Of a stretch of 64,000 bases of DNA, positions 1 through 55,322 are shown in pieces; the first letter of the stretch is position 1, and every line of letters starts with the position of its first letter. Source of the DNA: Leidyana gryllorum EB-2025a (lineage: Eukaryota; Protista; Apicomplexa). The stretch spans positions 1 to 64,000 of the forward strand of contig JBLWGC010000211.1 in the NCBI GenBank assembly GCA_048772705.1, given 5' to 3'. A program made the position numbers and the translations under genes. The notes under the pieces were generated by a model, which searched no databases, was not told the DNA's origin, and was given only the letters and a program-made list of their open reading frames with translations.

Positions 1-675
1 CAACAAAAGAAGGGGACAATGGCATAGGATAGACCAGTTGGGTTGCAACGAGCAGTTACTCGATCGGTGCCGAGACCGTGAGACGTCATCCGCAGCCGTA
101 CCGTACCACCGAAGACAGGAGACGTGAATAAGTTCTCACTAAACTCGACTTGGCCTCCGATACGAGGATAGGGGGCAGTGCAGCCAAGAGGACCCCTTTG
201 AAGACGGCTGACAGAAGTGTTCAGCCGTAATTATTAATAGCGGAGCAATTCGGGAGGGTTCGCCCATATTGACGGGAGAGAGGGCATTACAAAAAGCTCT
301 GCTGAGCAAATTAGCTCCGCAGCGTCGCCGTTTGTGGATAATTAGCATTCCGACGCCAGGCGAAGGGACCGTGCAGGTTCGACTGGCGTCTTTGAAGAGG
401 AAGAATTGCTCACCTCGTTGGGGGGCAGACTGGCCATCCGACACGCGTATCAGCTGGTAGGGGCAGCCCAGCTGAGTGGATCAAACTCCAGTTGGGGGAT
501 TATGAGATATGAGATATGTACACCCATTCACACCAGCCCCTCGTTCTAACATGACAACAATCTTTGGATCATTAATCGAACGGGCAGAGTATCACCACTA
601 CGAATATTTAGGGAAGGCTGAAGGCTAACTTCCCAAAGTTGATATTCCACGGCCCAAGTGTATGTTGAAAGGAGA

Positions 676-2330
676 CTACTGGCGGAATACCACCACAGAC
701 TCCATCAAACACATATCACCGACAGCAATGATCGGCAACTTGTGCTTCCTTCCCCACAACCCATCATTCCGCGCCTCCACCTCAAAGAATGCCGCCTGCA
801 ACGGTATTTGGGAGGGGTCCTTCCACACGAAGAAAGCTCTGGTGGAGTCGTTCGCCGGTTTACACGATGCGCAATGCACACCCAACCTGTGTTCAGTGGC
901 GGGGCTCCTCGTGCACGGACAGTACCAGCTTACTTTGGGGTCCCGTTCACTGTGTTCCCTCATGTGAGTCGTGAAACTCTTCATGCAGTCGTGCTCCTCC
1001 GAACAAAAGGGGCACTTTATCAGTTGGGATTCCACTGTTCCGGGCCGGCGTCGTCCCTGCATAGGCTTCGTTACGCAGTTTTGCACAAGGGCGTTTTCTA
1101 TTCTAGACAGCCTCCGGGGAGATTCTATCCGACGGCGGTAGATGGCAACGGGGACACGTTCTTCGTCCTTATTGAGTCCCATCGGGCTTAGCATTTACAT
1201 TACTCTGATCCATAATGGAAGTCGCGATTTCCGTCCCTAACTGGGCGGATGTTTGGCCACAAGTGTTTGTAGCCACTTTTGTTTGATTTTCTGGAATAAG
1301 GTCTGGTTTCATCTCAAACACAGACATAGCTTTATCGACCGAAGTCGACTCTGCAGCCGATGTTTGGTTATCGCAGTCAGCCAGCATATCGACGAGTGGC
1401 ATCGAACGGGGGACTTGGACGGTGCAGGATTGGTGCCCCTCTAGCCGTCCAGTCGCATTATCATGCACTCTCGGACCAGCAGGCATTGCTGCTTCACCAA
1501 TGGCACTTGCAGGTCTAAATTCTTTGGGTTTCATCGGGTGGAGTGCCGTCGCAGATATAAAACCCTTTCCCGCAGCCATATCGGCTTCGAGTCGAGGCCT
1601 TTTGCTTTCTGACTCCTCCAAGTCATCAGAGTCCCGTGTGGGAGCTCGAGCCTTTTTGCGAGAAGTTCGCACAGGTGTGTTGGGCGCTGGTGGGGGAGCG
1701 GGAGCTCCCAGCTGCCGGGGAGGGGCTGGAAGACTGTCGGAGCGACACCCCGTCCCGCCAACTGTGGCGGAGACCGGCTGGAACCCCTCGGTTCTCGTAT
1801 CCTTGGCCCTTCTCCCATAGCACTGCTATTGTGCTGAGCGGGGTCTGCTGTTCCACCGGGTGGTGGATTGGCCTCGCGGCCGTTTGATTGGTAGTTGGGC
1901 GCTCGGCGGGCACTGCGGCTCCACCCTGTGATTCTCTGGTCGATGTTGGGTTCCAATGGTGTGTGGTGGTTGGACTTGACCGATTACTCCGCTGGGGGGT
2001 GCCTTGTGAGCATCCGCCCCACCGGTATTTCGGACTCCCACCCTCCGCTGGGTGGTTCGCGCTTGTTTGGTCATGGAACGTCGGGTTTGTGGTGTGGATG
2101 GCGCGGTTGGTTGTATCTTCTTCCTGTGGGCAGCATTGACCATAAGAAAGTATCCTCTCTGTCTTTCAGCCGTGTCTTCGGGGTTCGCCCCCAGGACGCC
2201 GCAATGACATAGTGTGACAGGACAATGCTTTGGGTTCCGAGAGAGGAGCAGCGGCCACCCTAATTGGGGTCGTCTCCGGAATCTCCCCCATTGTACAGGT
2301 TGGAGTAGTGTTTGGCATCCTTAGCGACGA
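676..2330 (-). pseudogene. Frameshifted sister copy of the N-terminal half of the non-LTR retrotransposon ORF (zinc fingers present; no RT/RLE seen in window)
   Basis: ORF pieces match the 1789-aa ORF collinearly: 1826-2143 (TPQTRRSMTKQARTTQRR vs TPQIHRLATKQAKTNQQR), 1531-1956 (REPRGSSRSPP vs REPRSSSRSPP), 1169-1672 (AAMPAGPRVHDNATG...GTEIAT, near-identical) and 676-1194 (CPFC..H..H, CPC..H..C, AFFVWKDPS). A 1-nt insertion near 1172 shifts the frame. Confidence 0.85.
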
Positions 2331-2400
2331 GGGCCAACTTTACTATTCAAAATCCACTCAATTCGCGAATAATGCGATTACTGGGTAACGAAAGTACTTC

Positions 2401-2572
2401 GCACACGTATGGCACTCGGGTCGTTACGCGACTCTGACTGACAGATGCTCGACGAGCGGGATAGCACAATTACAACTCTTGAGCAAGTTGGATTTTGATC
2501 AACTTTAATGAGCTTTATAGTCACCGAAACCACAACCACAACCACAACGGATCGTCTGCGCCAGGCGAAGTT
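2401..2572 (-). ncRNA. U1 snRNA-like segment, copy 2
   Basis: Starts AACUUCGCCUGGCGC (U1: AUACUUACCUGG). Hairpin AAGUUG-AUCAAAAUC-CAACUU presents GAUCA, like the U1-70K loop. GUCG-CGUAA-CGAC hairpin followed by GCCAUACGUG, like the SL3/helix H junction. No Sm site seen. Confidence 0.4.
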
Positions 2573-2574
2573 TG

Positions 2575-2694
2575 TGGACCGCTTCCACGGGGGGGAGCAC
2601 ACGTTTGCACACGTTTGGTGGCAGAACCACCAAACACACACTCAGAAAACAGGTTCATAGGAACCCGTTTCTGCGTTTAAACAGAAAGAACTTA
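2575..2694 (-). ncRNA. 3' part of U2 snRNA-like sequence, copy 2 (starts at the AAGUUCUU preceding stem IIa)
   Basis: UAAGUUCUUUCUG-UUUAAACG-CAGAAA (IIa), CGGGUUC-CUAU-GAACCUG (IIb) and GUUUGGUGG-UUCUG-CCACCAAAC (III). Shares motifs with 8487-8633. Stem I and BSL are missing; stem IV is degenerate. Confidence 0.55.
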
Positions 2695-2890
2695 GCGAAA
2701 ATCGATTGGTTCAGCGATTGACACAAAACAGATAACCGGCGCAAGTGCGAAAACTTGGTACCGCATTTCACTTACAATGCACTATTCTTTTTCTTCAAAT
2801 GGAGAGTGGTTGTGACGTTTGTGTCGGCCTCCTGTGTTGCAAGAAAGCCGTGTGTTCGGGTAGAGGAATTGTTGGCGGGTGGCCGTGGTG

Positions 2891-5800
2891 TCATCTGCGG
2901 GACGTGATGAGATTTATCATTCGAACGGTGCCTTTGGCAGCCAGGAGGGAGCATCTTGCAGCGATTGCTCGTGCGTGCTTCTCTGTGAAACCGCAGGCAT
3001 TGAGGGCCTTTAAAGTGTCCGTTGGGACGTGGCCGAGATCTCCGATGACGATAGGGTGGAACCTGAGGGCACTGTTGGGGTGGAGGAGGGCGTAGCCGGG
3101 AAGCCAGGCCTCGGAGTACTTGGCTATCTTCTCCTGGGCGCAGGCGGCAAGGTACTCGGGTGAGGTTTGGTGACGCACTGTGACGTCTAAGACATGGATA
3201 GTCCGTTTCTCATTGTCAGTAATGACGAGATCCGGGTGGAGGTTGCAATTTGCGACTTGAGCGTGTCTCGTTTCGTGCGAGTTGATGGGTTGGTCGCTGG
3301 CATTGGCGGCCCACTCGATCGCCTTGACGATCTGATTGTGGCGGTTCTGCACAGCGTTCCTCATTGCCGCGTCACTGCACCCGCCGAGGTGACATAGCGT
3401 CTCCTCCTGCCGGTGACAAAGTCGGCACATCTTATCGATGTCCGGCTCAATCTTGGCGCGGCGGGCGTTCAGGGGCAGCAGTCCGATCTTGGCTTTGAGG
3501 ACTGTGGTGAGTTGCCACGGAGAGAGTTTTTGTGGGCGGAATAGGTAGCGATTGCCGATGGGGTCTTGGCATCGCGTTGTCCATCCCTGGGCCTTCTGTT
3601 TGCTCCATTCGTTGAGGTATTTTTGTTTGTGGGCTCGTTTAAAGTGGGCACAGATATCTGCGATGGGCGTTTCCGTGGATCGGTCGTACGGGACGACGTC
3701 TCCGTCGGGGCCCGCGCGCAGCTGCACCCCCTTCTGGCCCAGGAAGAGTGGGAGTTGGTTCCAGAGTCGCCGTTCGTTTGCGCGGCTCGCGGCTCGGGCA
3801 TTGTCGTTTACGCAATGGTTCAAATACATCAGGGCCTCCGTCAGCGTCTCTGCCGGATCCGGCGGAAAGGGTTCGTCCGGTCTGGCGGCCGCGAAGGCTC
3901 CGAGGCGGGCTGCGATCCGGATTTCCGGGTCTTTGGAGTTGAGTAAATATAGCGCTGCTGAACAGCGGAGTTTCCGATGGATATCGTCCAAGGGCTCCAC
4001 ACCCAGACCACCGTCTGGGACGGGGCTGTGTACGAAGCCGCTGCTACTTTTCTTGGGCAATCGAAGGCAGTGTTTCAGCGCTGCCCGTACTCTGCGGTCA
4101 AAGTCCTGCATTACTTTCACGTTGGTCGTGCAGCTCTGGATGTGATAAACCACTGACGGCAGAATGTGTCTTTTGATCAACATGAATTTGTACACTGGCT
4201 CCAGACAGCTTCTAGCGACGATCCAACATCGCTTGGCCAGTTGTTTAAGTACGCCGTTGATGGTGGTCGAGGTCGGGGCCAAAGGGTCGTCATCCTTTCC
4301 CAAATAGTTCATCTGCTCGTCTAACTGGGCGAGGGGCACCAGCTGTCCCTGCACTCGCAGTCGGTACTGCTCCGGCACGTCGACAGTCTGGACCCGTCCG
4401 TCCACTTTGCGGATCGATTGGTGTTTGCATTTGCTCACATTTGCCGTCAGTCCTGCCTTTACGAGGAACCAATTGACAATGTCATTGGCTTCGACCATTC
4501 TCGATGGGTTGTTCTGCATCACTCGAATGTCGTCGGCATACGCCAACACACTGAATGGCGGACCTCCCGGACATGTGGCGTACCCACTCGCTTTGAGACG
4601 CAGCAGTCTCCGAAGGAGGGGCTCTATGCACAGATTGAACAATAAGGGCGAAAGGGGATCGCCCTGGGCCACGCCTCGTCGTTGAGGAACGTTGCGCGGT
4701 GATCCGTTTACCCTCAGTAAGCGACAATTCGCCGGGTTACAGTATATATCGATTATTGGTTGCGGCACACGCAGAGCGCCTAACACGGCACGTGTGTACT
4801 CGAGCGGGATGCTTCCATAAGCGTCCTTCAAGTCATACTGGACGACATTGTACGTTTGTTTCTCATCGAATGCCTGTTTACGTGAGTCCTCAGCCACAAA
4901 CAGGTGCTCAAGGCACCCTCGAATAGGGACAAAGCCCTTCTGGCAGGGTGAGATCAGGTTGTGGGCTGTGCACCAGTTGCCGAACCGCGCCGCCAAAATG
5001 GCACTAACCATCTTGAAGGCGTTGCATTGCAAAGCAATGGGTCGATAATTGGTCACCACACTCGGGTCCCCCTTCTTATATATCATAGTGAGTCGAGTGA
5101 CTCGCAGACACTCTGGGACGCTCCCTGTTCTCAGTATGGCGTTCACAATATCAGCCAAAGACTGATGTAATACAAATATTGATTTCCATACGTTATACGA
5201 TAATCCATCGGCTCCAGCCGCCGTGTTGCCGCACTTTTTCATTACCCTTCTCACCTCCTTAACGTCAACCTCCTGCCCCAATAACTTGGAGTCATCGGGT
5301 TTCAGCTTCGGCAGGTGGGCCAACAGCTCGGCGTAGTCCTCTGCTGGCGGTGCGCGTGAATATTTCTGTTCTATTAGTTGCACAAATTCCCGGGCGGGGG
5401 GAGCGCGACGTCTCCTGGCCTGATACACCTGTTCCAGTCCGATGGCGTCCAGCGGGGTGCCCGCTCGGGCTCGCTGCGCCTCGTCATCCTGATACAGCCA
5501 TCTCAGCCCCGCTTTAGGGTTGCGTATAACGGCGTCCTGAATCGCTTTGACGCGTTTCCGTTGAGCTTCTCTCCTCTGCTTCCGCGTCGGCCCCCGGCCT
5601 CCCCTCGAACCGCCGTCCTCCCGCTGAGCGGCCGGAGCGTCCCGAGGGTCGGTCAGGTCCGGCGGGCCTTGAGGCTGCCTTGGCTCGTAGTACTTTTTTA
5701 GTATCTCGTAGAGCTCGTGGAGGAACAACTTGATGGCCAAGTTTACATCTTCGACATCGTGGGTACCCAGTCGTTCGTACAGAAATTGTCGTTGGGCCTT

Positions 5801-8248
5801 CACGGCCCCAATCAGTTGGTGCCATTTCTCCGGGGGTATCCTGACGATACGCCCTATCGGCGGCCGGGGCTCCGAGGAAACCGCTCGGGCCTCGTCACGC
5901 CAGTCGGGTGGCTCATACATTGAGCCTCCGCCGGGTGAAGGTGGCGTTGGAGGTGGTGGCGGTCCGGGTGGTGGCCGACCCAAGTCGGCAAAGTCGTTTC
6001 CTTCCTCCATACTCGTGTCGTCCATAGGGGCGTCACTCGTCGGAGCGCGGGTTGGGTCCCTGGACGGTTGTTGGGGCACTGTAGTGTTGTTTGTCTCTCT
6101 CGGCCTCGATCCTTCTGCCGCCCTCGGCTGGTTGGACGCAACTCTGGCGCCTACTCCAGCTATGAGCGGTGCATCGTCGTCTTCTTCCATGTCCTCGTCC
6201 GCTGTCGCGCCTCTCGCCTCTCCCACTGAAGCCGCGGGCACAAACGGCGCCGCAGACGCCCGCAGTGGTGGTGGGTTTCGAGCCGCCGCGTCCGAGTTCC
6301 GATTACGCCGGGGTACGTAAGGCAACGGGGCCTCCACAGCACGCCGACCTCCGAGCTCCGTAGTGGGCTCGATATTCCTTCTTATCGCTTCGGTCTCTCC
6401 AACCGTTACCGGCCGTTCAGAGAGAGTTACAGCGCCCGTAGGCGCACACTGTTCCGCAGTAGTGACGGTGGCCGCAGCCCGCGCCTCTACCTGGGAGGGT
6501 ACCGCCTGCGACGCTCGTCGGGACGGATCCTTCCAAACGAAGAAAGCTCCAGTGTAGTTGCAGGGCGCCTTGCACATTGCGACATGTTCCAGCAGATCCT
6601 TTTCGGTGAGGAAATGTCCCCCGCAAGGGCAGTTCCAGCTCACTTTGCTGGGGTCCCACTCACTGTGTGACTCTACGTGGTCCCGAAAGTCCCGCATAGA
6701 GTCATATCCCTCCAAACAGAAAGGGCAGTTTATCACACGGGAGGCAAACCTCTTCCTCAAGGTCTCACTATCAACGAATTCTCGCTTAATGAATTTCATG
6801 TCGCCCTGAGATACCAGGGTGCATTCAATATCCCACGCCTTCGCAGAATCGGTAACGGGGTGGCGGTAGGTCGCTACAAGAACATGTTCTTCGTCCGTAT
6901 GAGCCCCGGCGGGCTTCGTATTTACATTAGTCTGATCCATAGTAAAAGTCGCTATTTCCGTCCCTAACTGGGCGGATGTTTGGCCACAAGTGTTTGTAGC
7001 CACTTTTGTTTGATTTTCTGGAATAAGGTCTGGTTGTAGCTTCATCTCAAACACAGACATAGCTTTATCGACCGAGGTCGACTCTGCAGCCGATGTTTGG
7101 TTATCGCAGTCAGCCAGCATATCGACGAGTGGCATCGAACGGGGGACTTGGACGGTGTTGGATTGACGCCCCTCTAGCCGTCCAGTCGCATTATCATGCA
7201 CTCTCGGACCAGCAGGCATTGCTGCCTTACCGGACCTGTCGGCAGGAATAGGTTCTATCAGTCTAATACGCTTCCTAGGCTCCTCATCCACAATAGGTGG
7301 GATGGGGGTTAGCATAGTGGTCTTCCGACGCGGCCCCTCCGCCACTCGGCCTCCTACGCCCACATCGGGCCTTCGGGGCAACGGCTTTGGGGTCCGCAGG
7401 GGTTTCTTGGCGTTGGCTGAAGGAGCTGGGGTTCCCGAAAGGGTTCCAACAGGGGCACCCGCAGGGGTTCCCAGCTGAGACGCAGGGCCTAGGGAGACCG
7501 AGGGCACTCCACCCCGTCCCACCATCTTAGGTGGTGACCGGCTGGAGCTCCTCGGCTCCCGAAGCTTTTGGCGTTCAGTCCTGGCACATTGGTTGTGCTC
7601 AGGTTTCTGGCCGTGAGTTTGCCCGGCAGTGCCATTGGAGGCGAGACCAGGATGGTGGTGCAGTGTTTCAGCCATATCGGCTGCACTGTGGGTGGTGGGG
7701 TGGGTTGGGAGCACCCAGGCTTCCCCGATCGCTTGCATGTTTGGCAGTTCGAAGTCACCTACGGGATCATCCATAGGTTGTACGACGATGTTGTTCAGAG
7801 TTGGTGGGGCCCCGCCAATATCGCCAGCATTGACGATTTCAGCCATGGAGTCATCATCCCTATTCTGGATTCGCTCTCGGATACCTTCTACTCCAGTGGC
7901 TCTGACGGCGGCTCGTTGTTGGTTGGTCTTCGCTTGCTTGGTGGCGAGACGGTGGATTTGAGGAGTGGCAGTTTGGCTGTCCTTTGACTTATGTAGTTTC
8001 GTTGGTTTCGGATGAGTACGACCTTGAGGTGTTTGTCCGGGAAGTACCACGGCGGGCGATACTTCCAATGCGCTGCTCAGCGGGGCCGCGGACCCTCTGA
8101 GTTTTCGCAGCTTAGTGTGTAGTTGATACGGTGCTTTGACGATCTTCTTTGAACTTGGATTAGGAGGCGGAGACATACTGACATCATCGGTCATCCCGAC
8201 GTGTTCAGCCATCTCGCCGTCCTCCATCTCCATCTCAACAGAATCCAT
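2891..8248 (-). CDS. Non-LTR retrotransposon protein: zinc fingers, reverse transcriptase, CCHC knuckle, PD-(D/E)xK restriction-like endonuclease
   Basis: ZnFs CPFC..H..H and CPC..H..C. RT motifs NYRPIAL, QKGF, YDLKDAYGSI, GVAQGDPLSPLLFNL, YADD, GGLG. CRLC..ETLCHLGGC, RHNQIV, PDLV..DVTV..KIAKY. Uninterrupted frame; first ATG at 8248. Confidence 0.97.
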   Translation of the reverse strand: MDSVEMEMEDGEMAEHVGMTDDVSMSPPPNPSSKKIVKAPYQLHTKLRKLRGSAAPLSSALEVSPAVVLPGQTPQGRTHPKPTKLHKSKDSQTATPQIHRLATKQAKTNQQRAAVRATGVEGIRERIQNRDDDSMAEIVNAGDIGGAPPTLNNIVVQPMDDPVGDFELPNMQAIGEAWVLPTHPTTHSAADMAETLHHHPGLASNGTAGQTHGQKPEHNQCARTERQKLREPRSSSRSPPKMVGRGGVPSVSLGPASQLGTPAGAPVGTLSGTPAPSANAKKPLRTPKPLPRRPDVGVGGRVAEGPRRKTTMLTPIPPIVDEEPRKRIRLIEPIPADRSGKAAMPAGPRVHDNATGRLEGRQSNTVQVPRSMPLVDMLADCDNQTSAAESTSVDKAMSVFEMKLQPDLIPENQTKVATNTCGQTSAQLGTEIATFTMDQTNVNTKPAGAHTDEEHVLVATYRHPVTDSAKAWDIECTLVSQGDMKFIKREFVDSETLRKRFASRVINCPFCLEGYDSMRDFRDHVESHSEWDPSKVSWNCPCGGHFLTEKDLLEHVAMCKAPCNYTGAFFVWKDPSRRASQAVPSQVEARAAATVTTAEQCAPTGAVTLSERPVTVGETEAIRRNIEPTTELGGRRAVEAPLPYVPRRNRNSDAAARNPPPLRASAAPFVPAASVGEARGATADEDMEEDDDAPLIAGVGARVASNQPRAAEGSRPRETNNTTVPQQPSRDPTRAPTSDAPMDDTSMEEGNDFADLGRPPPGPPPPPTPPSPGGGSMYEPPDWRDEARAVSSEPRPPIGRIVRIPPEKWHQLIGAVKAQRQFLYERLGTHDVEDVNLAIKLFLHELYEILKKYYEPRQPQGPPDLTDPRDAPAAQREDGGSRGGRGPTRKQRREAQRKRVKAIQDAVIRNPKAGLRWLYQDDEAQRARAGTPLDAIGLEQVYQARRRRAPPAREFVQLIEQKYSRAPPAEDYAELLAHLPKLKPDDSKLLGQEVDVKEVRRVMKKCGNTAAGADGLSYNVWKSIFVLHQSLADIVNAILRTGSVPECLRVTRLTMIYKKGDPSVVTNYRPIALQCNAFKMVSAILAARFGNWCTAHNLISPCQKGFVPIRGCLEHLFVAEDSRKQAFDEKQTYNVVQYDLKDAYGSIPLEYTRAVLGALRVPQPIIDIYCNPANCRLLRVNGSPRNVPQRRGVAQGDPLSPLLFNLCIEPLLRRLLRLKASGYATCPGGPPFSVLAYADDIRVMQNNPSRMVEANDIVNWFLVKAGLTANVSKCKHQSIRKVDGRVQTVDVPEQYRLRVQGQLVPLAQLDEQMNYLGKDDDPLAPTSTTINGVLKQLAKRCWIVARSCLEPVYKFMLIKRHILPSVVYHIQSCTTNVKVMQDFDRRVRAALKHCLRLPKKSSSGFVHSPVPDGGLGVEPLDDIHRKLRCSAALYLLNSKDPEIRIAARLGAFAAARPDEPFPPDPAETLTEALMYLNHCVNDNARAASRANERRLWNQLPLFLGQKGVQLRAGPDGDVVPYDRSTETPIADICAHFKRAHKQKYLNEWSKQKAQGWTTRCQDPIGNRYLFRPQKLSPWQLTTVLKAKIGLLPLNARRAKIEPDIDKMCRLCHRQEETLCHLGGCSDAAMRNAVQNRHNQIVKAIEWAANASDQPINSHETRHAQVANCNLHPDLVITDNEKRTIHVLDVTVRHQTSPEYLAACAQEKIAKYSEAWLPGYALLHPNSALRFHPIVIGDLGHVPTDTLKALNACGFTEKHARAIAARCSLLAAKGTVRMINLITSRR

Positions 8249-8311
8249 TGCAATAATCACTGGCGACCACGGGTAATTTTATTTATCCACGGACCTCCAG
8301 CGACCTCCGTC

Positions 8312-8483
8312 CACACACACGTAGGGCTCACTAGTCGTTACGCGACCACGGCCAATGAATAGTCAAAGTGTACACCTTGTTTACAGAGCTTGATCACCTC
8401 TTTTACAGCAGCCACTCCACAGGGGTATCTTTGAGGAATAACTCCCCAAAGCCCCAATCCACACGTCCGCGCCAGGCGAAGTT
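8312..8483 (-). ncRNA. U1 snRNA-like segment, copy 1
   Basis: 5' AACUUCGCCUGGCGCG. AGAG-GUGAUCAAG-CUCU loop. GGC..UGGUCG-CGUAA-CGACUA..GCC hairpin followed by CUACGUGU, which can pair back to GCGCG (helix H-like). An extra hairpin is inserted at ~8422-8456. No canonical Sm site. Confidence 0.45.
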
Positions 8484-8486
8484 GGT

Positions 8487-8672
8487 GGCCTGCTCCCGCT
8501 AGATGCAGGGCAGGGCAGACCTTGGTGTCGGAAGGTGGCAGAACCACCAAACCAACACCCCAACGAAAGAAACTCCGGTAAACGGAAGCGGGTTCAATGA
8601 ACCCGTTTCTGCGTTTAAACAGAAAAGAACTTATAAAATACAAAAGATCTGAGCGAAAGCTCGAGAAGGTAC
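8487..8672 (-). ncRNA. Divergent full-length U2 snRNA-like sequence (186 nt)
   Basis: GUACCUUCUCGAGCUUUCGCUCAGAUC vs canonical-type AUACCUUCUCGGCCUUUUGGCUAAGAUC. IIa UUUCUG-UUUAAACG-CAGAAA; IIb CGGGUUC/GAACCCG. CGUUUA is complementary to loop IIa (IIc). Stem III GGUGUUGG..GGUGG-UUCUG-CCACC..CCGACACC. Stem IV GGUCUGC.CCUGC-CCUGCAUCUA-GCGGG.A.GCAGGCC with UGCA in the loop. Confidence 0.72.
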
Positions 8673-8716
8673 ATTTTTTGTCCGCTCTCAAGTAGTGTCC
8701 GAACAATAAAAAAAAG

Positions 8717-8829
8717 CGGGTGGGCGTCATCCCTGTTTTCGGGACAGAAAACCTCATTTCTGAAACGACGGGTGGGTGTCATCCCTGTTTTTGGGACAGG
8801 AAAACCTCATTTTTGGCCCGCGGGTGGGC
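8717..8829. repeat. 52-bp direct tandem repeat (2 copies plus start of a third) just upstream of the U2-like sequence
   Basis: cgggtggg(c/t)gtcatccctgtttt(c/t)gggacag(g)aaaacctcattt at 8717 and 8769; cgggtggg recurs at 8821. Confidence 0.9.
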
Positions 8830-10569
8830 CAGTGAGATTATGACCTATCGTCTTTGATAGAGGGATGTTCATTTGATGGGTTGCGGGGTACTCAGGGGGC
8901 GCTCCTCGTCCCTCGACGGTTTCGGTTTTTCGTTGCCAAATCGTGACAGCTTCTCCCCATTTAAGCCGCCCCCCCGAGTAACCACGCGCCCCTAATCTCT
9001 CCTTTGCCCACCGCCCTTCACATCCCCATCTTTTTGAGTTGGTAGAATAGATTCTCCATTCAAATTGAGATCCTCAGATCCCGTCTTCAGTTCAGACAGA
9101 AATCTGATCGATTTGGAGAAACAAATACCAAAATTTTTGGCCAGCAGCCAGTGTGCGTCTGAACAAAGAAAGATTGTTGCAAAAGGGTGCGATCGATTAC
9201 TGTAAAAGCCGCCGAGTTGCTAAAGATATTTATCAGTCGTACCCTCTGAGCTTCGTTTCAGAATGCCTCTTTTGATTCTTACCGAAGACATGGTGTGGAA
9301 CTTTGGTCTGATCGATGATGGACAGAGTGCCCATGCTTCCAGCCTGGACTATTGCAACTCTCACTGCTCGAAAGACGCCTTTGATGGCCACCGACGGCGT
9401 CGAACGCGACGCTCTCTTCCATCAACTACTCCCAGAGGCTCCTTTGACAGCACCCGTCGCGACACGTGGGGCGGAGGACGGCGATATTGAGCAGTTGGTG
9501 TGAGTCGCGAGGCGGAGAGCAATGTTTGCTCAGACTTTATGTTCGTCCATATGATCCATTCTACGAGAGTATGTCGCTCTGCGATCGACGTATCGTTAGT
9601 GATTCCCCTCTCCCTCACCCTCTCTCTCGCTCTGTTCCACCCCTGTCCAGACACCTAACTCCAAAAGCGATCGGTCCAATTCTCTCTCGGTTGCTCGAAT
9701 CGCTCTCCGTTCTCTCTCAATGAGTGTTGCCCGCAGTTATGTCCGTCCTTTTTACGGGTCGGGGCGAAGACCATTGAGTGACAGATCCGAGATCGTCGAG
9801 CTGGAGATTCAGATCTCACTACTCACTATGCCATTATAACGATCTGTGTTGTGTTCAAGGTACTCCCGAGTATGTCGGGTATGTTACGCCAAACCCGACT
9901 GCACTATACTTTACGTCTCTCATCGAATGTTGACGCTGCCCCAAAAGAGGAGTCGTTCCAGACGAACGACCGACCTGTCAATGTTAGATTGCCAAAGGTG
10001 GAGGAGAGAGGTGATCACTCGGCTACAGCAGAAGAAAGACTCGAAAGCGCTGTAGACAGACGCGACTCTTTTTCTCACCGCAAATGGCTCCGTATCTCTC
10101 TTATCCGTTACCATAAAATAAATCTGTTAACCAAAAATTCTACACAGCCCTCATTGATGGGGTGCTCAGCTCCTGACATCGCCGTCCCCTTCTGTGAATT
10201 GGCTTCTGTCGTCTGCTATCGACGCCGCCGGAGTGGTGAGTCGGGAGCGCTCTCAGCGTGGGTGAGACGATGTCGCCCACTGCTGGACGGAGGAGCGGAT
10301 TGGTTCGGGGGCGTAGTTTGGGTTCCCTCTCCTATAGTGTGGTGGTGAGTGCTCCACTGACGAAGTGAAGTGGTGGAATGCCCTACACACTGCGTTCGCG
10401 CCCTTCCTATACCGTCCAGGTGCACAGTACCCACACGCCGTCTCGCCCTTCTCGCTCCTCCCGCCCCAAACGAGACCCCGTGTCGCAGTGTCGCACCCGA
10501 CCGGCCGGTGTGTGTGTGTGCTGTCTCTGCACACCTACTTCTCACCGAGGGTCGCGATGCCGCCGCTGA

Positions 10570-11300
10570 CGTGCTGTCGGATACGACCACTGCTTCTAAG
10601 ATGCGCGGGGAATTCCCGACCGACCACTCTTCCGGTGATATATGATAAGTCTCACCTCGCCATAGGAAGATCCCGGTCGCCACAATGTCCAAGGCGCCTT
10701 TCACTATACCGTCGCTCGGCCCGGCCGTGTCTTCTGCTGGTATGAGAGTATTTGACACTGCTGCGCGACCTCGCTGGCATCGCGACGGCCAATTAAGCCG
10801 CTTCAACTCGACGGTGGCGGGGGGCCGCGGGATCCCTCAGGGCGCATCCACGGCGCCGCAGCGGTGATACAGGTAAGGTCCACCAAATGAGCTCTCTCCT
10901 CGTGCCGCCAGAGCACCGCGTTCGCCCTGAATGGTCCGGCTGTGCTCAAACTCGTCCACTGTTTACCTTCGAACACGGGCAGAAGCCTTCATCCCCTTCA
11001 GCCGCCACGTCGATTGAATGCGATAGCCGATGGCTGCGGCCATCGGTGGGGCATTGTCAAAGCGGCGAGGGCGGAATACGTCGTTTCAGAGGGTCCCTTT
11101 CTGTCCTTCGCGGGAATCGATCTCAAACTCGTAATCGCTCAGCGTCATAGCCTCATAGGCGATCTGTCGACCAGTGGCTATCCAAAGCCACTCGGACCCC
11201 TCAGGATCCGTCCGGACAGAATCTTCGCTGATGCAACGACGACTACGTCCTCAAATGTACGCCGGTGATCGAAGTTGCGCCTTATGGGGGCCCACGAGGT
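10570..11300 (-). mobile_element. Decayed Ty3/Gypsy-like pol remnant (RNase H C-terminus and start of integrase)
   Basis: Manual translation VRTDPEGSEWLWIATGRQIAYEAMTLSDYEFEIDSREGQK..*NDVFR resembles the Gypsy RNase H end (TDH..L.WL...GR.ARW...L.EYDFEI.YRPG..N..AD..SR). Downstream LKRLNWP and VVVSD resemble integrase motifs. Many stops and frameshifts. Confidence 0.5.
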
Positions 11301-14300
11301 GTCTTTGACCCGGCCAAGTCATTGCTGAGCCCGGAGTCGGTTTCATCCTCTCGCGGCCTCAGTTGCCTCGGTGGCGCAATTCAGCCTACTGGGCCACCTC
11401 GGGTGAAACCCGACCCTCACGGCGGGGCTTAGAGTCGCCGGTGGGATACGGAGCAGCAAGAGGGGCTCACACGCAGCTGCGCAACTGTAGCTCGGCGCTG
11501 AGGACAAGCCCAGCCAGCCGCCCGTGACGTCCTCCTGCCAATGATTGGACCCCTCGTTGGCTCTTTCAATTCTCACTGTTCTTCTCAGCGTCGTTTTGGA
11601 GGAACTAAACACAGCGCTCGAAGGCCTCTCTCACTGACTCTCGTTTTGTGCGCGGGATTCCAACAATTACGACAAGTGTCGATCACAGGTAGACTTTGTG
11701 CAGTTTGCGTTCGCGATGTCCTCTCCTCGTGCGGTTGGATTGCATCGCGTCTCGAGGTGATTTGCCGCTGGCCTCATTCGTAAGTCGAGTGGTGCCATGT
11801 CCAGTCCAGTCTGGCGGTTGTCTGCCAACATCCGATTGCCCAACGAGAGTGTCGAGGCGCAGTTTGGAGACGTCCAGAAGGTCTCGTTGAGCGTCGGTCG
11901 CCCGGGATTTCACCCTTCACCGATTCACGGAGCTAATTGAATCACCCGTTGGGGCCTCGAAGGGCGCGCTCGACGAGAGTTTTAGCGATTTGGCGATTCG
12001 GCGGCGGAACGAGGGTCGCTGCTGTTTGGCGAGTTTCATTTCTGCTGCAGTGTCCTTCGCGTCCCCATTCTCGGAGGGAGGCAGCGCGATGCGTTGTTGT
12101 ACGTTGGTGAGATAATGAATGACTCAGTGACTGGAACGCTGTGGTCGGTCTGAAACCCTTTTTAAACTGTCGCAGTCGCGTGCTGCACTGCCAGCGAGAC
12201 TGGGCTAGCGGAGACGGAGTCTCCGGGCGCGAAAACACAACACTCGGTCAGTGAATTGTAGATTAGATGTTTTTTTCCTCAGACCACAGAGGCATGGCCA
12301 GATGGCCAGCCGGCACTCGAAAGTTCCAAACAGGGCACAGTGGGATATGAACGTGCCTTTGTTAACTAACTATGGTGAGCTGACAGCCAAAACGCTGTGT
12401 ATTGACGTCAAAACGACGTTCGCGAATGTGCATTGCGGCGTGGTCAGGGGGCAGCGGATTGGGATTAACGCCCACGCGGTGATCAACGGCATCGATTACT
12501 TGATCGATGCGGCGAAAAGGGGTTCCCACAGAGTACTCTGTGGGCGGGATTGTTTTGGGCTGAACCACAATACTCTGCGGCGGGGGGCTGTTTTTGGGCT
12601 GGGCTGAGACCAGAGGGCTACAGCTGAGAGATCGCTCCTACTGGCGGTTCTCTCAGCAAAGTTACGCGGCGGACCAAAAGGAAAGAACGCGATGATACGA
12701 TTTTACGATCGTACTGCGATCGTAATTATGTTAGGGAGGCGGACGGACCGCACGAAGAAGAAAAAAAAAAGCCACGCAAAAAGGACAATTCAGCTCAGCG
12801 ATGCAGAGCCACGGCTTCGGTCCAGATTTCTGCGGGACGCCCTCTCAAACTCAGGGACGCTCCCGCGACTCCTCCGGCGCCTCAGAGGACCCTTGCATCC
12901 TCCCGAAGGCCTCCATTGAGACCCCCCAAACCGGTGATGAGGGGTGCTCCTCCTGAGCAACCTCCTCCGCAGCCGGCTCCTCCTCCGTCAAACCCCCTTC
13001 CTCCGCCGGCGGACACGCCTCCTCTGTGACAGAGGCCACCTGCCAAGGGGCCTCGCCAGCGGACCGGACGCACCTCAGAGATAGGCGGACAACTCCGCCA
13101 CTCCTCCGCCCGGCTCTTGCGCGCGCAAGAGCAACAACCAACTCCAGGGGGGAAACCACGAACGACGACCGGAGGCCAGCACGGCGCTCAACAGCGGCCG
13201 CCACGCCCCTCGCGTGGCGGGTGGGTCTTCGAGAGGCTGCACTGGACAGCCGTCCCGGCTCGGCTCTGCACGCCACCTTCTTCGTGCAGGTCTTTATGAC
13301 GGAAAGTTGCGCCGCCATCCCGAAAAGTCGCGTGCCGCTCCAATTAAAACACCAAGATCCAGGGAGTCTGGATCTTAAACTTTGATGTTGAGCTGCACAC
13401 AACTTCTTTTTAAATAAGTTTCCAGTATATACCCTACAGTTTTACTGGAAACCTATTTGCAACTCATACAAACATGAGGCCAGATCGCATCAGATCTGGC
13501 CATTTGGGACTTCTTACGATTCCCAAACCTTTGGAGGGTATCTTTGATACCCTCTCAAGCCATTTCCACGCGATCGACACACCCAATACAGACATCAGAT
13601 CACACACACTCGCGTTTTTACGCACACAAGTGTTCTGTCTGGTTCGATATTGCGCGATTTCGCGCGAGGACGCGCGCATTTCCGCGCAGGCATACAAAGA
13701 TCCCACTCAATGTACTGAACCCATCAGCAGCAAGTCGAACCATCATTGAATAGATAGTTAGCACTCTACAACATGGATGCTTAACCCGGCCCAGCCCTCA
13801 CCGGTGCTCCACAAATTACACATCCACTTACACTGTATACACTTGATGCCCAAGCGGGTGCTCACACATCACAACACTACATAGACAGTTACTTAACACT
13901 TCATACAAAAAGATGCCCAATCCACCCAACTTCACCAGACAGTGCTCCATAAAGCCCATCTGACACAGTACAGTGTATCATATTACCCTCAATCAGCCAC
14001 TAAGGCGCAACATACCCCAAGTCAGCCAGTAAGGCACCTGGTCGGAATCGCAGCGATCCCACTTTGGGCCATCATCTATTAAAGCCACAGTTGCAGTTGA
14101 TTGATAAGCCGTGTCACAAAAGACTCCGACGCTTGACCACTTCACCACGAAAAGCCCATACACTGGCATCAACACACATCATTAGTCATCCTATCACACT
14201 CGCTCTTGTGTCGACGGCACAAAACCGCTCCGCTTGATGCGTCTCGCTATAAACGACACCTCGGTATCCCGGTGAACCGATGAAGGAGCTCGAGCATTGG

Positions 14301-40800: not shown

Positions 40801-42943
40801 CTTAAACAGCTCCAGAATGAGCACAAGAAACAGCTCAAAGTCTTGCAGGAACGTGATGTGGACCCCGCCCAAGCCGCTGAAGACAGAAAGGCCTTAGCCC
40901 AACTCGAACAGCTCCTTCTCAAACTCCAAGATCAAGCCGTGCATATCCAGTCGAAAATAACTGTCGAAGAGAAGAAACGAGAAAGGTGAGACCCAATGTC
41001 AACACTTCAGCCTCCCCCTTCATCACCACCCGTCAATAATCAGGATTCAACTCAAAATAGCTGAAGTCGGCGGACCTGCCCGAAAGGTGCTCAACGATAA
41101 ACTCGTCAAATTGGAGGCTGGTGAGCAACAAATCGCAACTATACGACACCCGATACACCACATATACACACGCCCAAAAACCGACACACCAGATAACACA
41201 CACACACACATATACACATACACATATACACACAAGCGCTCGCACACATACATACACACACACACGCCCAAAGGGCTCGCACACACATGTGATCATCAGA
41301 TTTGAAACATGCGCAAGATGTGACGAACAATGGTACCGTCAAGAGTCAGGCCGCTAAGGAAAAGGCAGTGAATATCGTCTCGAAGCAAATCCCAGAAAAA
41401 GAGGCTGAGATTCTCACGATCGAGGAAGAACTTAAGGCGACTCATGGGAAAATAGAAGAACTCGAAGCCAAGGGCATACACTTGGTGAAAAGTGTGGCTG
41501 ATCTTGAAGCTCAGGTTCACCAACTCGAGGAGGTTATCGCAGAGAAGAAGGCTCTCAGAGCAGACAAGGAGGTCGAATTGAGAAATCAAAGCTCCGCTGA
41601 ACTGGAATTAAGGGCACGTGTCGACGAATATCGCGCTATCTCCATCAAACTAAAACACAATATCAACGACATACAAAAGACAATCGACGATCTCCAAGCA
41701 GACTTTGAGAAGCTACCCAAGATCGATCCCGAATTAGAAGACTCATTGGCTGGTCAAGGTCTCATCCAAAAGGCAGGGGCAGACGATTCACAAGCAGCCG
41801 TCAAGTGTGAAAGCGTCGCAGCCACCACTTTGGTTCGTGTCAAACGGGAGATTACTGATGTCGATGAGGTGCAAATGGAGGAGAGCCCCCAAGAAAATGC
41901 AAACCAACGTCGATTAGTTGCCCGCGTGATGGATGTTTCTTGGCCCGACCTGGCAGAAGACACTATTGTCAACGTCAGTCAAGGAGAAATTGATCTGGAA
42001 CTTTACCAGGCGGAGGAGCTGCTCACCAATTTCGGTACACAGGAAGGAAACAAAAAGAAGGGCGAAGATGTACTCATGGACCTCACAGTCCTGCAGCGCT
42101 TTCAAGAGAAATCCGGCCTCTATAGGGAGGCAAAGCGATTACTGGATTTGCAGAATAAGGTGAGTGGGCACCTTTGTGTGCTGATAGTGCCGTTTCTGCC
42201 CGTCGCACACGTGTGTGTGCCCGTTACAAGAATACCATCACGGCAATATGGCAACCTGCAGACTTTGGAAGATTTGTGCGACAAGGCGCAGAGTCTGAGG
42301 ACGAAGCGTAAATCCGATTTTCACGACGGCTTCATGATAATCAGTGAAAAGGTGAAGGAGATATATCAGATGCTGACGCTGGGAGGCGACGCCGAACTCG
42401 AATGGAAAGACCCGTCTGATCCTTTCACTGAGGGCATAGAATTCAGTGTGCGTCCACCAGGCAAATCGTGGAGGGTGATACAGAACCTGAGCGGAGGAGA
42501 AAAGACGTTGTCGTCACTTGCACTGATATTCGCCCTGCATCATTACAGGCCAACCCCCATCTATTTTCTGGATGAGATTGATGCGGCACTGGACCCGAAT
42601 AATGTTGTAATAATTGCGAGTTACGTTGCAGCGGTAAGCGGTTCGATGTTTGTCATGTACTTGGGACGGACTCGACGAGTGTTGGGCTGTCGGCTGGGCT
42701 GTGTTCTTTACCCGAGTATTTTAGAGTCGCACGGAAGGCGCGCAGTTCGTGGTGATTAGTTTACGGCACCAGTTCTTCGAGAGGGCTGACCGGCTGATAG
42801 GGGTGTGCAAGGTGGCGAACGTTACCCAAACGTGCGCTCTGGATCCTGACGCCTTTGGAGCCAAAGTGGGGGCAATTGAGGTGGAAGCCTCAGTCACAAA
42901 GAAACGACGTCTTCCACTTGAAAACCTAGTAGCTTTTCAATGA
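37864..42943 (+). CDS. SMC4: Condensin subunit SMC4, multi-exon
   Basis: LENFKSYAG, GPNGSGKSN, DLEHNRFLILQGEVEQ, hinge FRVVT..SGVVSGG, LTLGGDAELE, LSGGEKTLSSLAL, DEIDAALD, ISLR. Confidence 0.97.
38108..38184. repeat. (CA/CACT)n microsatellite in SMC4 intron
   Basis: cactcacacactc repeats. Confidence 0.9.
38929..38980. repeat. (AG/AGAC)n microsatellite in SMC4 intron
   Basis: agacagagagagagacag directly after a GTAAG donor. Confidence 0.9.
39641..39729. repeat. 8-bp tandem repeat CTGTGAC(A/G), about 10 copies, in SMC4 intron
   Basis: Begins at the donor GTGAGACA. Confidence 0.92.
41146..41290. repeat. CA/TA-rich low-complexity tract in SMC4 intron
   Basis: acacacacacatatacacatacac. Confidence 0.85.
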
Positions 42944-49700: not shown

Positions 49701-50309
49701 TTGCACGCCTTGTTGTCTTTGAAAGCGTCGAGCTTCGACAGTACGCCCAGAACGCGTGGAAACCCGTGGGTTTGCATAATATTGAGAAACTCAAACGTAT
49801 CCATCTCGAGCCCTTTGGTGGCATCAACCATCAGGATGGCCAAATCAGCAATCTTGGCCAAGTCAAGGAGGGCCCCAATGTCATTGGGCGCCTCCACAAA
49901 GGTCAATCGACGACTTTTTGATACCACTGTGGTCACAGGACCCGCCAAACTCGTTATCGTCTGTTTGGTATAATGCTTAATCAACGATTTGATTAGCGTC
50001 GATTTTCCGACCCCTGGGGGACCTTGGACCACAACAATATACGGGGGAGCGTCTACTAAGGGCGTTTTATCCACAACGCGCTCATATTTCTCTCGCTTCT
50101 CAGCAATCTCAGCCGCCCGCTGGTTCTTCTTTTGCGCCGAACGCCAACCTCCCGAGAACGTGAAAGCCTAGAAAACTGTAATATGGTCCAGACCGCAACC
50201 CACCTACCTTGTGATTGGGCTTTGAGACATTCTGCTTAGCCTTCTTCTTATTAACCTTGGCTCCTGACTTCTGCGCCCGGTGAGCCTTCTGGCGAGGCTG
50301 GCCTTCCAT
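46755..50309 (-). CDS. BMS1: Ribosome biogenesis GTPase BMS1
   Basis: PPYIVVVQGPPGVGKSTLIKSL, KIADL, HGFPRVLGV, WRSQHPY, SIGWRRYQS, LKYTPEHMHC, KKLK..KNMF, SGIRGIIKK. Confidence 0.97.
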
Positions 50310-55312: not shown

Positions 55313-55322
55313 ATTTTTCGCC

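What the first reader, a model, noticed from the sequence alone, without database searches (positions are those of the whole stretch)
8312..8672. Retrotransposon led by a fused U2-like + U1-like snRNA module, repeated in front of both element copies
Seen: on the minus strand, ~360 nt upstream of the RT ORF read as a 186-nt U2-like fold followed after only 3 nt by a U1-like segment. The same module, lacking the U2 5' end, sits in front of the sister copy (2401-2694). The two leaders are mostly diverged but keep exact islands: UAAGUUCUU..CUGUUUAAACGCAGAAACGGGUUC, GUUUGGUGGUUCUGCCACC, AACUUCGCCUGGCGC, UGAUCAA, GUCGCGUAACGAC and UACGUGUG. They also keep hairpins with different stem sequences. Known: Utopia (RLE) and Keno (Tx1) elements insert into U2 genes, and crocodilian SINEU elements derive from U1 or U2. 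I am not aware of an autonomous LINE carrying a chimeric U2-U1 mimic as its 5' UTR. Inference: the element may use snRNA mimicry for transcription or capping from an snRNA-type promoter, for binding U1-70K, U2B'' or SF3b, or for nuclear re-import of its RNP.
Basis: partly seen in the sequence, partly recalled or inferred. Interest (0 to 1): 0.93.

Follow-up and report, generated by a model that had tools for sequence, protein, structure and literature searches.

The report
U2-targeting Utopia retrotransposon array
Two head-to-tail copies of a Utopia-type jumping gene sit at the one spot in a U2 snRNA gene that this family always targets, in a gregarine parasite genome; the "U2-like leader" is real and is the back half of U2 that travels in front of each copy, but no U1 part was detected.

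Summary
Rfam matches a full-length U2 at 8672-8480 (-) (76.5 bits, cut-off 46). The U1 half is not supported: there is no U1 match at E<=10, even in a 261-nt search, and the segment folds no better than shuffles.

The ORF (1785 aa) has zinc fingers, RT, a CCHC knuckle and a restriction-like endonuclease. Its 3' UTR abuts U2 sequence that starts exactly at nt 39. That junction is the published signature of Utopia (Kojima & Jurka 2015), who also saw "intact U2" upstream of oomycete copies. The host is a gregarine, where such elements were unclassified.

The new point concerns who owns the U2 fragment. In an oomycete genome with two independent arrays, U2 nt 39-192 plus spacer follows the element downstream of it, with sharp boundaries at nt 39. 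So the mobile unit probably includes the U2 3' part, and each insertion rebuilds a U2(-like) gene under whose promoter the new copy sits. It does not support snRNA-protein mimicry.

Verdict: a new member of a known kind, with a useful reinterpretation.

The parts
8717..8803 (-). Two tandem copies (52-nt period, 91% identical) of a 35-nt motif, ending about 45 nt upstream of U2 nt 1. Candidate snRNA-type proximal promoter of the head U2-like gene.
   Evidence: the repeat finder; sequence read. The promoter role is inferred from position only.
8634..8672 (-). Head of the array: U2 nt 1-38. Nt 1-28 resemble U2 (CUUCUCG, stem-loop I, AGAUC). Nt 29-41 are scrambled: GUAGUA is absent and there are 2 extra nt.
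   Evidence: Rfam alignment. The similarity to unit B stops here.
8480..8633 (-). Leader of unit A, U2-derived part (U2 nt 39-192). It has SLIIa, SLIIb, SLIII and SLIV.
   Evidence: RF00004, 76.5 bits; fold; similarity to B starts at 8633 = nt 39.
8249..8479 (-). It has four short islands shared with B.
   Evidence: No U1 or other Rfam family at E<=10; fold z = +0.57; islands located.
2891..8248 (-). ORF A, 1785 aa from the ATG, intact. Zinc fingers at aa 508-559, RT at about aa 1058-1293 (from the ATG; 1062-1297 in the GTG-started ORF) with YADD at 1237, CCHC at aa 1608-1624, and restriction-like endonuclease motifs RHN 1636, PD 1672, D 1688, EK..KY 1706-1711.
   Evidence: (best PDB matches are R2 proteins, E=2e-46).
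2695..2890 (-). 3' UTR of unit A, ending directly against U2 nt 39 of unit B.
2569..2694 (-). Leader of unit B, U2-derived part. It starts exactly at U2 nt 39 and keeps SLIIa, SLIIb, SLIII and a short SLIV-position hairpin.
   Evidence: It does not reach any Rfam threshold on its own.
2402..2568 (-). Leader of unit B, spacer with the same islands as A.
769..1838 (-). Remnant of ORF B (matches aa 221-594 of A). The segments lie in different reading frames, so this copy is dead. The window ends before its RT.
   Evidence: tblastn and blastn; overlapping ORFs in different frames.

Best explanation
This is the 5' end of a Utopia-type non-LTR retrotransposon: restriction-like endonuclease, NeSL/R2-like RT, target U2 snRNA genes. 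Two copies are stacked head to tail at one U2-derived locus of a gregarine genome.

Each unit has four parts: a U2 nt 39-192-like segment, a spacer of about 230 nt, one ORF (zinc fingers, RT, CCHC, RLE) and a 3' UTR of about 196 nt. Unit A is 8633..2695 and is intact. Unit B is 2694..<1 and is frameshifted. U2 nt 1-38 and a promoter-like tandem motif sit only at the head.

Proposed mechanism:
(a) Inferred: transcription starts at the head U2 promoter and reads through the U2-like part and spacer into the ORF.
(b) Established for RLE elements such as R2, and shown here only by the junction: the endonuclease nicks a U2 gene between nt 38 and 39, and the RNA is copied in by target-primed reverse transcription.
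(c) Inferred by analogy with R2/28S co-transcripts: the end of the cDNA, complementary to U2, joins within the target's own nt 1-38. The insertion therefore rebuilds a complete U2(-like) gene and leaves the old nt 39-192 behind the new copy.
(d) Shown by the layout: repeated hits on the rebuilt site stack units head-first. The head-proximal copy is the young one (A, intact). The distal one is old (B, decayed).

The 'U1-like' stretch is simply the rest of the 5' UTR. My probabilities: Utopia-type element with an nt-39 junction, about 0.9; the U2 nt 39-192 plus spacer being carried by the element and not being resident array DNA, about 0.65 for this window.
For: U2 CM match. ORF architecture and RLE motifs. 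A's 3' UTR abuts U2 starting at nt 39, and A/B similarity begins exactly there. This is the published Utopia/Keno junction, and 'intact U2' upstream of Utopia was reported in Phytophthora (PMC4640811).

The nearest library relatives (29-31% identity) include three U2-flanked lineages. L006 has an intact U2 (142 bits), a 342-nt spacer, an ORF, a 3' UTR, then U2 from nt 39, spacer and ORF. L007 has U2 from nt 39 after its ORF. L005 has the U2 5' part before its ORF.

Test of who owns the leader, in genome GCA_006386115.1 on two contigs. Every unit starts at nt 39. Family X units at two loci are 97.6-99% identical from nt 39 through the spacer and ORF to the end of the 3' UTR. In array L008 the order is Y0|X|Y1|Y2. 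The U2 type and spacer always match the element downstream: Y 3' end | X-type U2 + X, and X 3' end | Y-type U2 + Y. No U2 fragment is chimeric. X- and Y-type U2 halves are 84% identical, with the Sm region, SLIII loop and SLIV conserved and the SLIII stems compensated.

In the window, the leaders are as diverged as the ORFs (56% against 65%). The age order fits head-first stacking, with A intact and B frameshifted.
Against: There are only two units in the window, and no other copy of this family could be retrieved. Ownership of the leader in the gregarine therefore rests on analogy with the oomycete arrays plus co-divergence.

The head U2 lacks the branch-point sequence, so 'rebuilding a working U2' does not hold here. 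Nt 29-41 are scrambled, whereas a homology-guided 5' join should be seamless.

Homogeneous tandem units could also arise by unequal crossing-over. A 348-nt patch of 90% identity in the ORFs shows that A and B exchange sequence, so the exact islands may be conversion tracts and not constrained sites.

Four of seven relative lineages examined showed no U2 on their mostly short contigs. No RT tree with labelled references was made. No transcript data exist.
Confidence: 0.72

Rival explanations
1. Resident-array model (Kojima & Jurka 2015). The U2-like sequences and spacers are members of a pre-existing tandem U2 gene array. Each Utopia insertion at nt 39 deleted the upstream spacer remainder plus U2 nt 1-38, so a whole neighbouring U2 ends up in front of the element. 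The leader is not part of the element.
For: It is the published interpretation of the same layout in Phytophthora. The head U2 has its own promoter-like repeats. With two units the window alone cannot exclude it.
Against: In the oomycete arrays the U2 variant and the spacer go with the downstream element family in all six cases seen. Identity equals that of the element body and the boundaries fall sharply at nt 39, in two separate contigs and in an interleaved Y|X|Y|Y array. In L006 the head U2 follows an ordinary protein gene, not another U2. In the window the two 'array members' are only 56-58% identical, unlike homogenised snRNA arrays.
Confidence: 0.22
2. The element carries a fused U2 + U1 mimic as a functional snRNP decoy, used for TMG capping, for binding U1-70K, U2B'' or SF3b, or for nuclear re-import.
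For: The U2-like part keeps four U2 stem-loops. Short U1-like words (ACUU..CCUGGC, GAUCAAG) are conserved in both leaders.
Against: No U1 match at E<=10 in three searches, and no excess folding energy. The branch-point sequence is absent and the Sm site is unclear in A. The SLIV loop is not conserved in B. The presence of U2 sequence is fully explained by the known target site.
Confidence: 0.05
3. The leader is an evolutionary accident with no role. It would be a chimeric retrocopy made when the RT switched templates from the element RNA onto a U2 (read-through) transcript, as in U6-L1 chimeras, and was then simply inherited.
For: The oomycete X leader has an A35 tract 165 nt after the U2 3' end, like a fossil poly(A) tail between U2 flank and the original 5' UTR.
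Against: This explains origin, not persistence. Two oomycete families and two gregarine lineages all keep a U2 half that starts at exactly nt 39. In the oomycetes that half preserves U2 structure by compensatory change. No poly(A) tract is present in the gregarine leaders.
Confidence: 0.1

Closest known systems
Utopia (NeSL-clade RLE non-LTR retrotransposons targeting U2 snRNA genes; Kojima & Jurka 2015, PMC4640811)
   Same: A single ORF with N-terminal zinc fingers, RT, and C-terminal CCHC + PD-(D/E)xK endonuclease. The 3' end is joined to U2 at nt 39. There are tandem arrays of diverged families. A whole U2 lies upstream of the element, as in Phytophthora.
   Different: The host is a gregarine apicomplexan, which is not among the listed hosts. 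There is no RNase H upstream of RT, unlike the oomycete subgroup. It is only 29-31% identical to any protein in the library. The flanking U2 is degenerate, with no GUAGUA. The paper treats the upstream U2 as resident DNA, whereas my analysis suggests it is carried by the element.
Keno (Tx1-group, APE-type LINE in U2 genes)
   Same: The same insertion site in U2.
   Different: [quoted passage not shown] This ORF shows no Exo_endo_phos match and has an RLE instead.
R2 (28S rDNA-specific RLE element)
   Same: R2 proteins are the best solved-structure relatives. R2 depends on the host gene's promoter through co-transcription, and upstream target sequence in the transcript helps form the 5' junction (my own knowledge of the R2 literature).
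   Different: The target is U2, not 28S. No HDV-like or other ribozyme family was detected in the leader at E<=10. R2 does not rebuild its target gene.
YURE (Ciona), related to Utopia
   Same: YURECi (Q76IP0) is the closest named protein in the word-indexed search.
   Different: YURE inserts in U2-derived satellites only occasionally.
Prokaryotic integrative elements that carry the 3' part of a tRNA gene (analogy; my own knowledge)
   Same: Integration inside a small RNA gene is healed because the element brings a replacement for the displaced 3' part.
   Different: Those use DNA recombinases and attP/attB identity. Here the process would be reverse transcription of a co-transcript.

Membership tests
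Utopia | 3' end of the element joined to U2 sequence beginning at nt 39 | tested here: met
   A's 3' UTR ends at 2695 and U2-like sequence starts at 2694. This aligns to 8633, which is model position 39 in the Rfam alignment.
Utopia | One ORF with N-terminal zinc fingers, central RT, and C-terminal CCHC + restriction-like endonuclease | tested here: met
   ZFs at aa 508-559, RVT_1 at E=2.4e-29, CCHC at 1608-1624, RHN/PD/D/K motifs aligned with relatives. Best PDB matches are R2 proteins.
Utopia | RT groups with Utopia/NeSL/YURE in a phylogeny | tested here: inconclusive
   No labelled reference set was available. The closest named protein is YURECi. Three of seven nearest relative lineages are U2-flanked, including an RNase-H-type oomycete Utopia. 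No tree was built.
Utopia, oomycete subgroup | Archaeal-type RNase H domain upstream of RT | tested here: not met
   Pfam finds only RVT_1 in the 1789-aa ORF at E<=0.01. L006 and L008 proteins do carry RNase_H/RVT_3.
U2 snRNA (RF00004), functional gene | Covariance-model score above the gathering threshold | tested here: met
   76.5 bits against 46 for 8672-8480. The B fragment alone does not score.
U2 snRNA (RF00004), functional gene | Invariant branch-point recognition sequence GUAGUA (nt 33-38) and a canonical Sm site | tested here: not met
   The model's GUGUAGUAUCUG (nt 31-42) is replaced by GUAUUUUAUAAG, preceded by a 2-nt insertion. No AU(4-6)G Sm site is evident in A. The sequence is U2-derived but not a working U2.
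U1 snRNA (RF00003) | Covariance-model match, even a weak one | tested here: not met
   No match at E<=10 in 12 kb, 261 nt or 441 nt searches. Fold z = +0.57.
Keno / Tx1 | APE-type endonuclease N-terminal to RT | tested here: not met
   No PF03372 match. An RLE is present at the C-terminus.
Self-cleaving ribozyme at the 5' junction (as in R2) | Match to HDV-like, hammerhead, twister or other ribozyme families in the leader | tested here: not met
   None at E<=10. Caveat: pseudoknotted HDV-like ribozymes are often missed by covariance models, and no descriptor search was run.

The most novel reading that the evidence does not exclude
Utopia elements of SAR protists (oomycetes and this gregarine) carry U2 nt 39-192 plus a spacer as their own 5' end. 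Every insertion at nt 38/39 then rebuilds a complete U2 gene in front of the new copy. This would be a self-healing, self-renewing target site for a LINE. It would put the element under the U2 promoter. It would explain why arrays show one intact U2 followed by many 5'-truncated ones. It would also resolve the published puzzle of how several families persist in about 10 U2 genes.
Probability: 0.6. Interest if true: 0.72.

Novelty: new member of a known kind. Interest (0 to 1): 0.5.

Why it matters
As first stated, with a LINE carrying a U2-U1 snRNP mimic, the finding would have been a new kind of element, but the evidence does not support that. What remains has two points of value.

First, it classifies a gregarine non-LTR element as a U2-targeting Utopia. 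That extends the family to Apicomplexa, where the one survey I found left such elements unclassified (PMC9141347).

Second, it bears on an open question in the Utopia paper: why whole U2 genes, not nt 1-38 stubs, precede the elements, and how several families survive on a handful of target genes. If the element brings its own U2 3' half, insertions cost the host no U2 gene and always recreate a target. That is a strategy known from tRNA-integrating prokaryotic elements but, to my knowledge, not from retrotransposons. It also matters for current efforts to use site-specific RLE elements as gene-insertion tools.

Tried and rejected
1. U1 identity of 8261-8479: three Rfam searches at E<=10 and a fold-versus-shuffle test were all negative.
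2. Other copies of this family:
   - An exhaustive HMMER search of 1.8 billion representatives gave nothing above 31% identity.
   - Exact look-ups of two window ORFs found nothing on record.
   - Two metagenome DNA pattern scans with leader islands gave zero hits.
3. Relatives P0001 (L001-3), P0241 (L004), P0301 (L010) and P0325 (L011) have no U2 on their contigs, so they give no help either way.
4. Extending L006 to see the array's end failed because the contig stops inside the poly(A) tract of a third unit's leader.
5. A cross-phylum MAFFT/RNAalifold alignment of U2 3' halves recovered only SLIIa, with compensatory AU/UA swaps. SLIII and SLIV misaligned, so I used per-sequence folds instead.
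6. I considered that the head's scrambled nt 29-41 is the stub of a severely 5'-truncated earlier insertion. The resemblance to A's 3' end (ATTTT..TAA) is too weak to claim.
7. I considered the window to be oomycete because of the Utopia precedent. The BMS1 search rejected that.
Nothing in the window was taken for human.

Full report
WHAT IS THERE. On the minus strand, Rfam's U2 model matches 8672-8480 end to end (positions 1-192, 76.5 bits, gathering score 46, E=2.6e-13). It is the only family in the 64-kb window to reach its threshold. Downstream lie a 231-nt stretch (8479-8249), an intact ORF of 1785 aa from the ATG at 8248 to the stop at 2891, and a 196-nt 3' UTR. Directly after that, at 2694, comes a second U2-like segment that lacks the U2 5' end. 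It is followed by frameshifted remnants of a second copy of the same protein (769-1838). The two leaders are only 56% identical overall, yet they share exact runs of 27, 19, 15 and 13 nt. None of 20,000 permutations of the match pattern reached this. Per-sequence folds show SLIIa, SLIIb and SLIII in both leaders. SLIV is a 12-bp stem in A and a 5-bp hairpin of different sequence in B. The descriptive part of the finding is therefore accurate.

THE U1 PART. There is no U1 match at E<=10 in 1-12000, in 8240-8500 alone, where the filters are laxest, or in 2300-2740. The segment 8261-8479 folds at -67.3 kcal/mol, against -70.0 +/- 4.7 for dinucleotide shuffles (z = +0.57). What remains are short words resembling the U1 5' end and the SL1 loop. 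I treat this segment as the rest of a 5' UTR.

WHAT THE ELEMENT IS. Pfam finds RVT_1 (E=2.4e-29). The best solved-structure relatives are R2 retrotransposon proteins (E=2e-46). The C-terminus carries a CX2C..H..C knuckle, then RHN, PD, D and EK..KY motifs that align with relatives. Two zinc fingers lie at aa 508-559. There is no APE domain and no RNase H. The element is therefore a restriction-like-endonuclease LINE. The key fact is the junction. The similarity between the two leaders begins at 8633/2694, which is position 39 of the U2 model, and 2694 is the first base after A's 3' UTR. Kojima & Jurka (PMC4640811) defined Utopia by exactly this: RLE elements of the NeSL clade whose 3' ends are followed by U2 starting at nt 39. 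Keno, an APE element, uses the same site. They also reported that Phytophthora arrays hold different Utopia families, and that upstream of the elements they found 'intact U2 genes instead' of the expected nt 1-38 stub. The window shows that layout.

HOST. The window carries long intron-free eukaryotic genes (BMS1, SMC-type, cyclophilin, MFS, subtilase). The BMS1 ORF's best matches are Gregarina sp. and Blabericola (867-911 bits), well ahead of coccidia (about 640 bits). The source is therefore a gregarine apicomplexan. The apicomplexan mobilome survey found about ten non-LTR candidates in G. niphandrodes but could not classify them, and it does not mention Utopia or NeSL (PMC9141347).

RELATIVES. 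No protein above 31% identity exists among 1.8 billion cluster representatives, and the window's ORFs are not on record. Two DNA scans of metagenomes with leader islands found nothing. Covariation across copies of this family is therefore out of reach. Contigs could be fetched for seven distant relative lineages, and three of them are U2-flanked. L006/L008 is an oomycete-type element with RNase H + RT in NCBI assembly GCA_006386115.1. L007 has U2 from nt 39 right after its ORF. L005 has U2 nt 1 to about 60 just before its ORF. Four lineages showed no U2, mostly on short contigs.

WHO OWNS THE U2 FRAGMENT? Kojima & Jurka explained the upstream intact U2 by deletion of nt 1-38 and spacer within a resident tandem U2 array, and they called the persistence of five families on about ten U2 genes a surprise. 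The two contigs of GCA_006386115.1 allow a test.

In L006 an ordinary transporter gene is followed by a canonical U2 (142 bits), a 342-nt spacer, ORF X1, a 3' UTR, then U2 from nt 39, the same spacer and ORF X2. The two proteins are 99% identical, and identity between the units starts exactly at nt 39. A third unit begins before the contig ends.

In L008, on another contig, the order is Y0 | X | Y1 | Y2, and every unit starts at nt 39. The X unit there is 97.6-99% identical to the L006 X unit from nt 39 through the spacer and ORF to the last base of the 3' UTR. Y1 and Y2 are 99.7% identical. X and Y share only about 64% identity in parts of the ORF and 84% in the U2 half, and their spacers cannot be aligned.

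The U2 variant and spacer always match the element that follows them, not the one before. After Y0's 3' end comes X-type U2 and then X. After X's 3' end comes Y-type U2 and then Y1. No U2 fragment is a chimera, so crossing-over inside U2 is not what interleaved the units. The X and Y U2 halves keep the Sm region, the SLIII loop and SLIV. They differ in the SLIII stems, yet both fold equally well (-17.1 and -16.4 kcal/mol).

The simplest reading is that the mobile unit is [U2 nt 39-192 + spacer + ORF + 3' UTR], inserted at nt 38/39 of a complete U2. Each insertion then rebuilds a whole U2 in front of the new copy. Arrays grow at the head, and there is one intact U2 followed by many truncated ones, which matches the counts in the paper's Table 3. 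None of the later papers I checked that cite the Utopia paper makes this point.

BACK TO THE WINDOW. The same model fits. The array has a head (U2 nt 1-38 plus a 52-nt tandem motif ending about 45 nt upstream, a candidate promoter), then unit A, then unit B. The leaders are as diverged as the ORFs (56% against 65% nt identity), unlike homogenised snRNA arrays. The head-proximal unit is intact and the distal one is dead, as head-first stacking predicts.

Several things do not fit neatly. The head U2 is not a working U2: GUAGUA is replaced, there is a 2-nt insertion, and A has no clear Sm site. The scrambled stretch (nt 29-41) lies right at the insertion site, whereas a homology-guided join should be seamless. 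A 348-nt patch of 90% identity inside the ORFs (A 6899-7246, B 1172-1513) shows that the neighbours exchange sequence, so the leader islands could be conversion tracts and not constrained sites.

MECHANISM, WITH STATUS. Shown: the element type, the nt-39 junction, the unit structure, and the association of leader with element in the oomycete. Established elsewhere: bottom-strand nicking and target-primed reverse transcription by RLE elements, and R2's reliance on host-gene co-transcription. Inferred: transcription from the head U2 promoter with read-through into the ORF, and 5' joining by pairing of the cDNA end with the target's nt 1-38. Not supported: snRNP mimicry.

VERDICT. The U2 observation is confirmed and the U1 observation is not. 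I rate the novelty as a new member of a known kind. It has a new host phylum, no RNase H and a very divergent protein. It also comes with a testable reinterpretation of how these elements treat their target.

Noticed in passing
window 8717-8803 (-): A 35-nt motif in two tandem copies (52-nt period, 91% identical), each containing a short palindrome (CCCTGT..ACAGGG). They end about 45 nt upstream of U2 nt 1, so this is a candidate gregarine snRNA promoter element.
   Followed up: partly
window 6899-7246 (A) vs 1172-1513 (B), minus strand: A 348-nt patch of 90% nt identity (exact runs of 82, 81 and 58 nt; 87% aa) inside ORFs that are otherwise 65% identical or unalignable. It looks like a gene-conversion tract between the neighbouring copies.
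   Followed up: partly
window 8632-8644 (-), U2 model nt 29-41: The stretch that is most invariant in U2 across eukaryotes is scrambled here, with a 2-nt insertion, exactly next to the Utopia insertion point, while both sides still match U2. It could be an imprecise 5' junction or the stub of an earlier truncated insertion. Unexplained.
   Followed up: partly
L006 5659-6000, L006 13193-13527, L008 6407-6758, L009 tail: The family-X leader contains an A-rich tract of about 35 A, 165 nt after the U2 3' end. It resembles a fossil poly(A) tail, as if the leader arose by template switching onto a polyadenylated U2 read-through transcript. The assembly of L009 breaks inside it.
   Followed up: partly
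L008 8147-9980 vs L006 7389-8008: The family-X ORF holds a 144-nt (48-aa) tandem repeat whose copy number differs between the two loci.
   Followed up: no
L005 61-171: This relative has U2 nt 1 to about 60 just upstream of its ORF. U2 therefore runs past nt 38 on the 5' side, as expected for the roughly 20-bp target duplication described for reptile Utopia.
   Followed up: no
L007 2020-2206 (-): A weak U1 match (23.6 bits, gathering score 69.5, E=0.036) lies inside the ORF on the opposite strand. I take it as noise, and it shows what sub-threshold U1 hits look like.
   Followed up: no
window 46997-50074 (-), 41302-42759 (+), 55236-56711 (+), 53996-55312 (+), 57969-59027 (+): Long intron-free ORFs for BMS1, an SMC-type ATPase, a cyclophilin, an MFS transporter and a subtilase. 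BMS1 places the source among the gregarines.
   Followed up: partly
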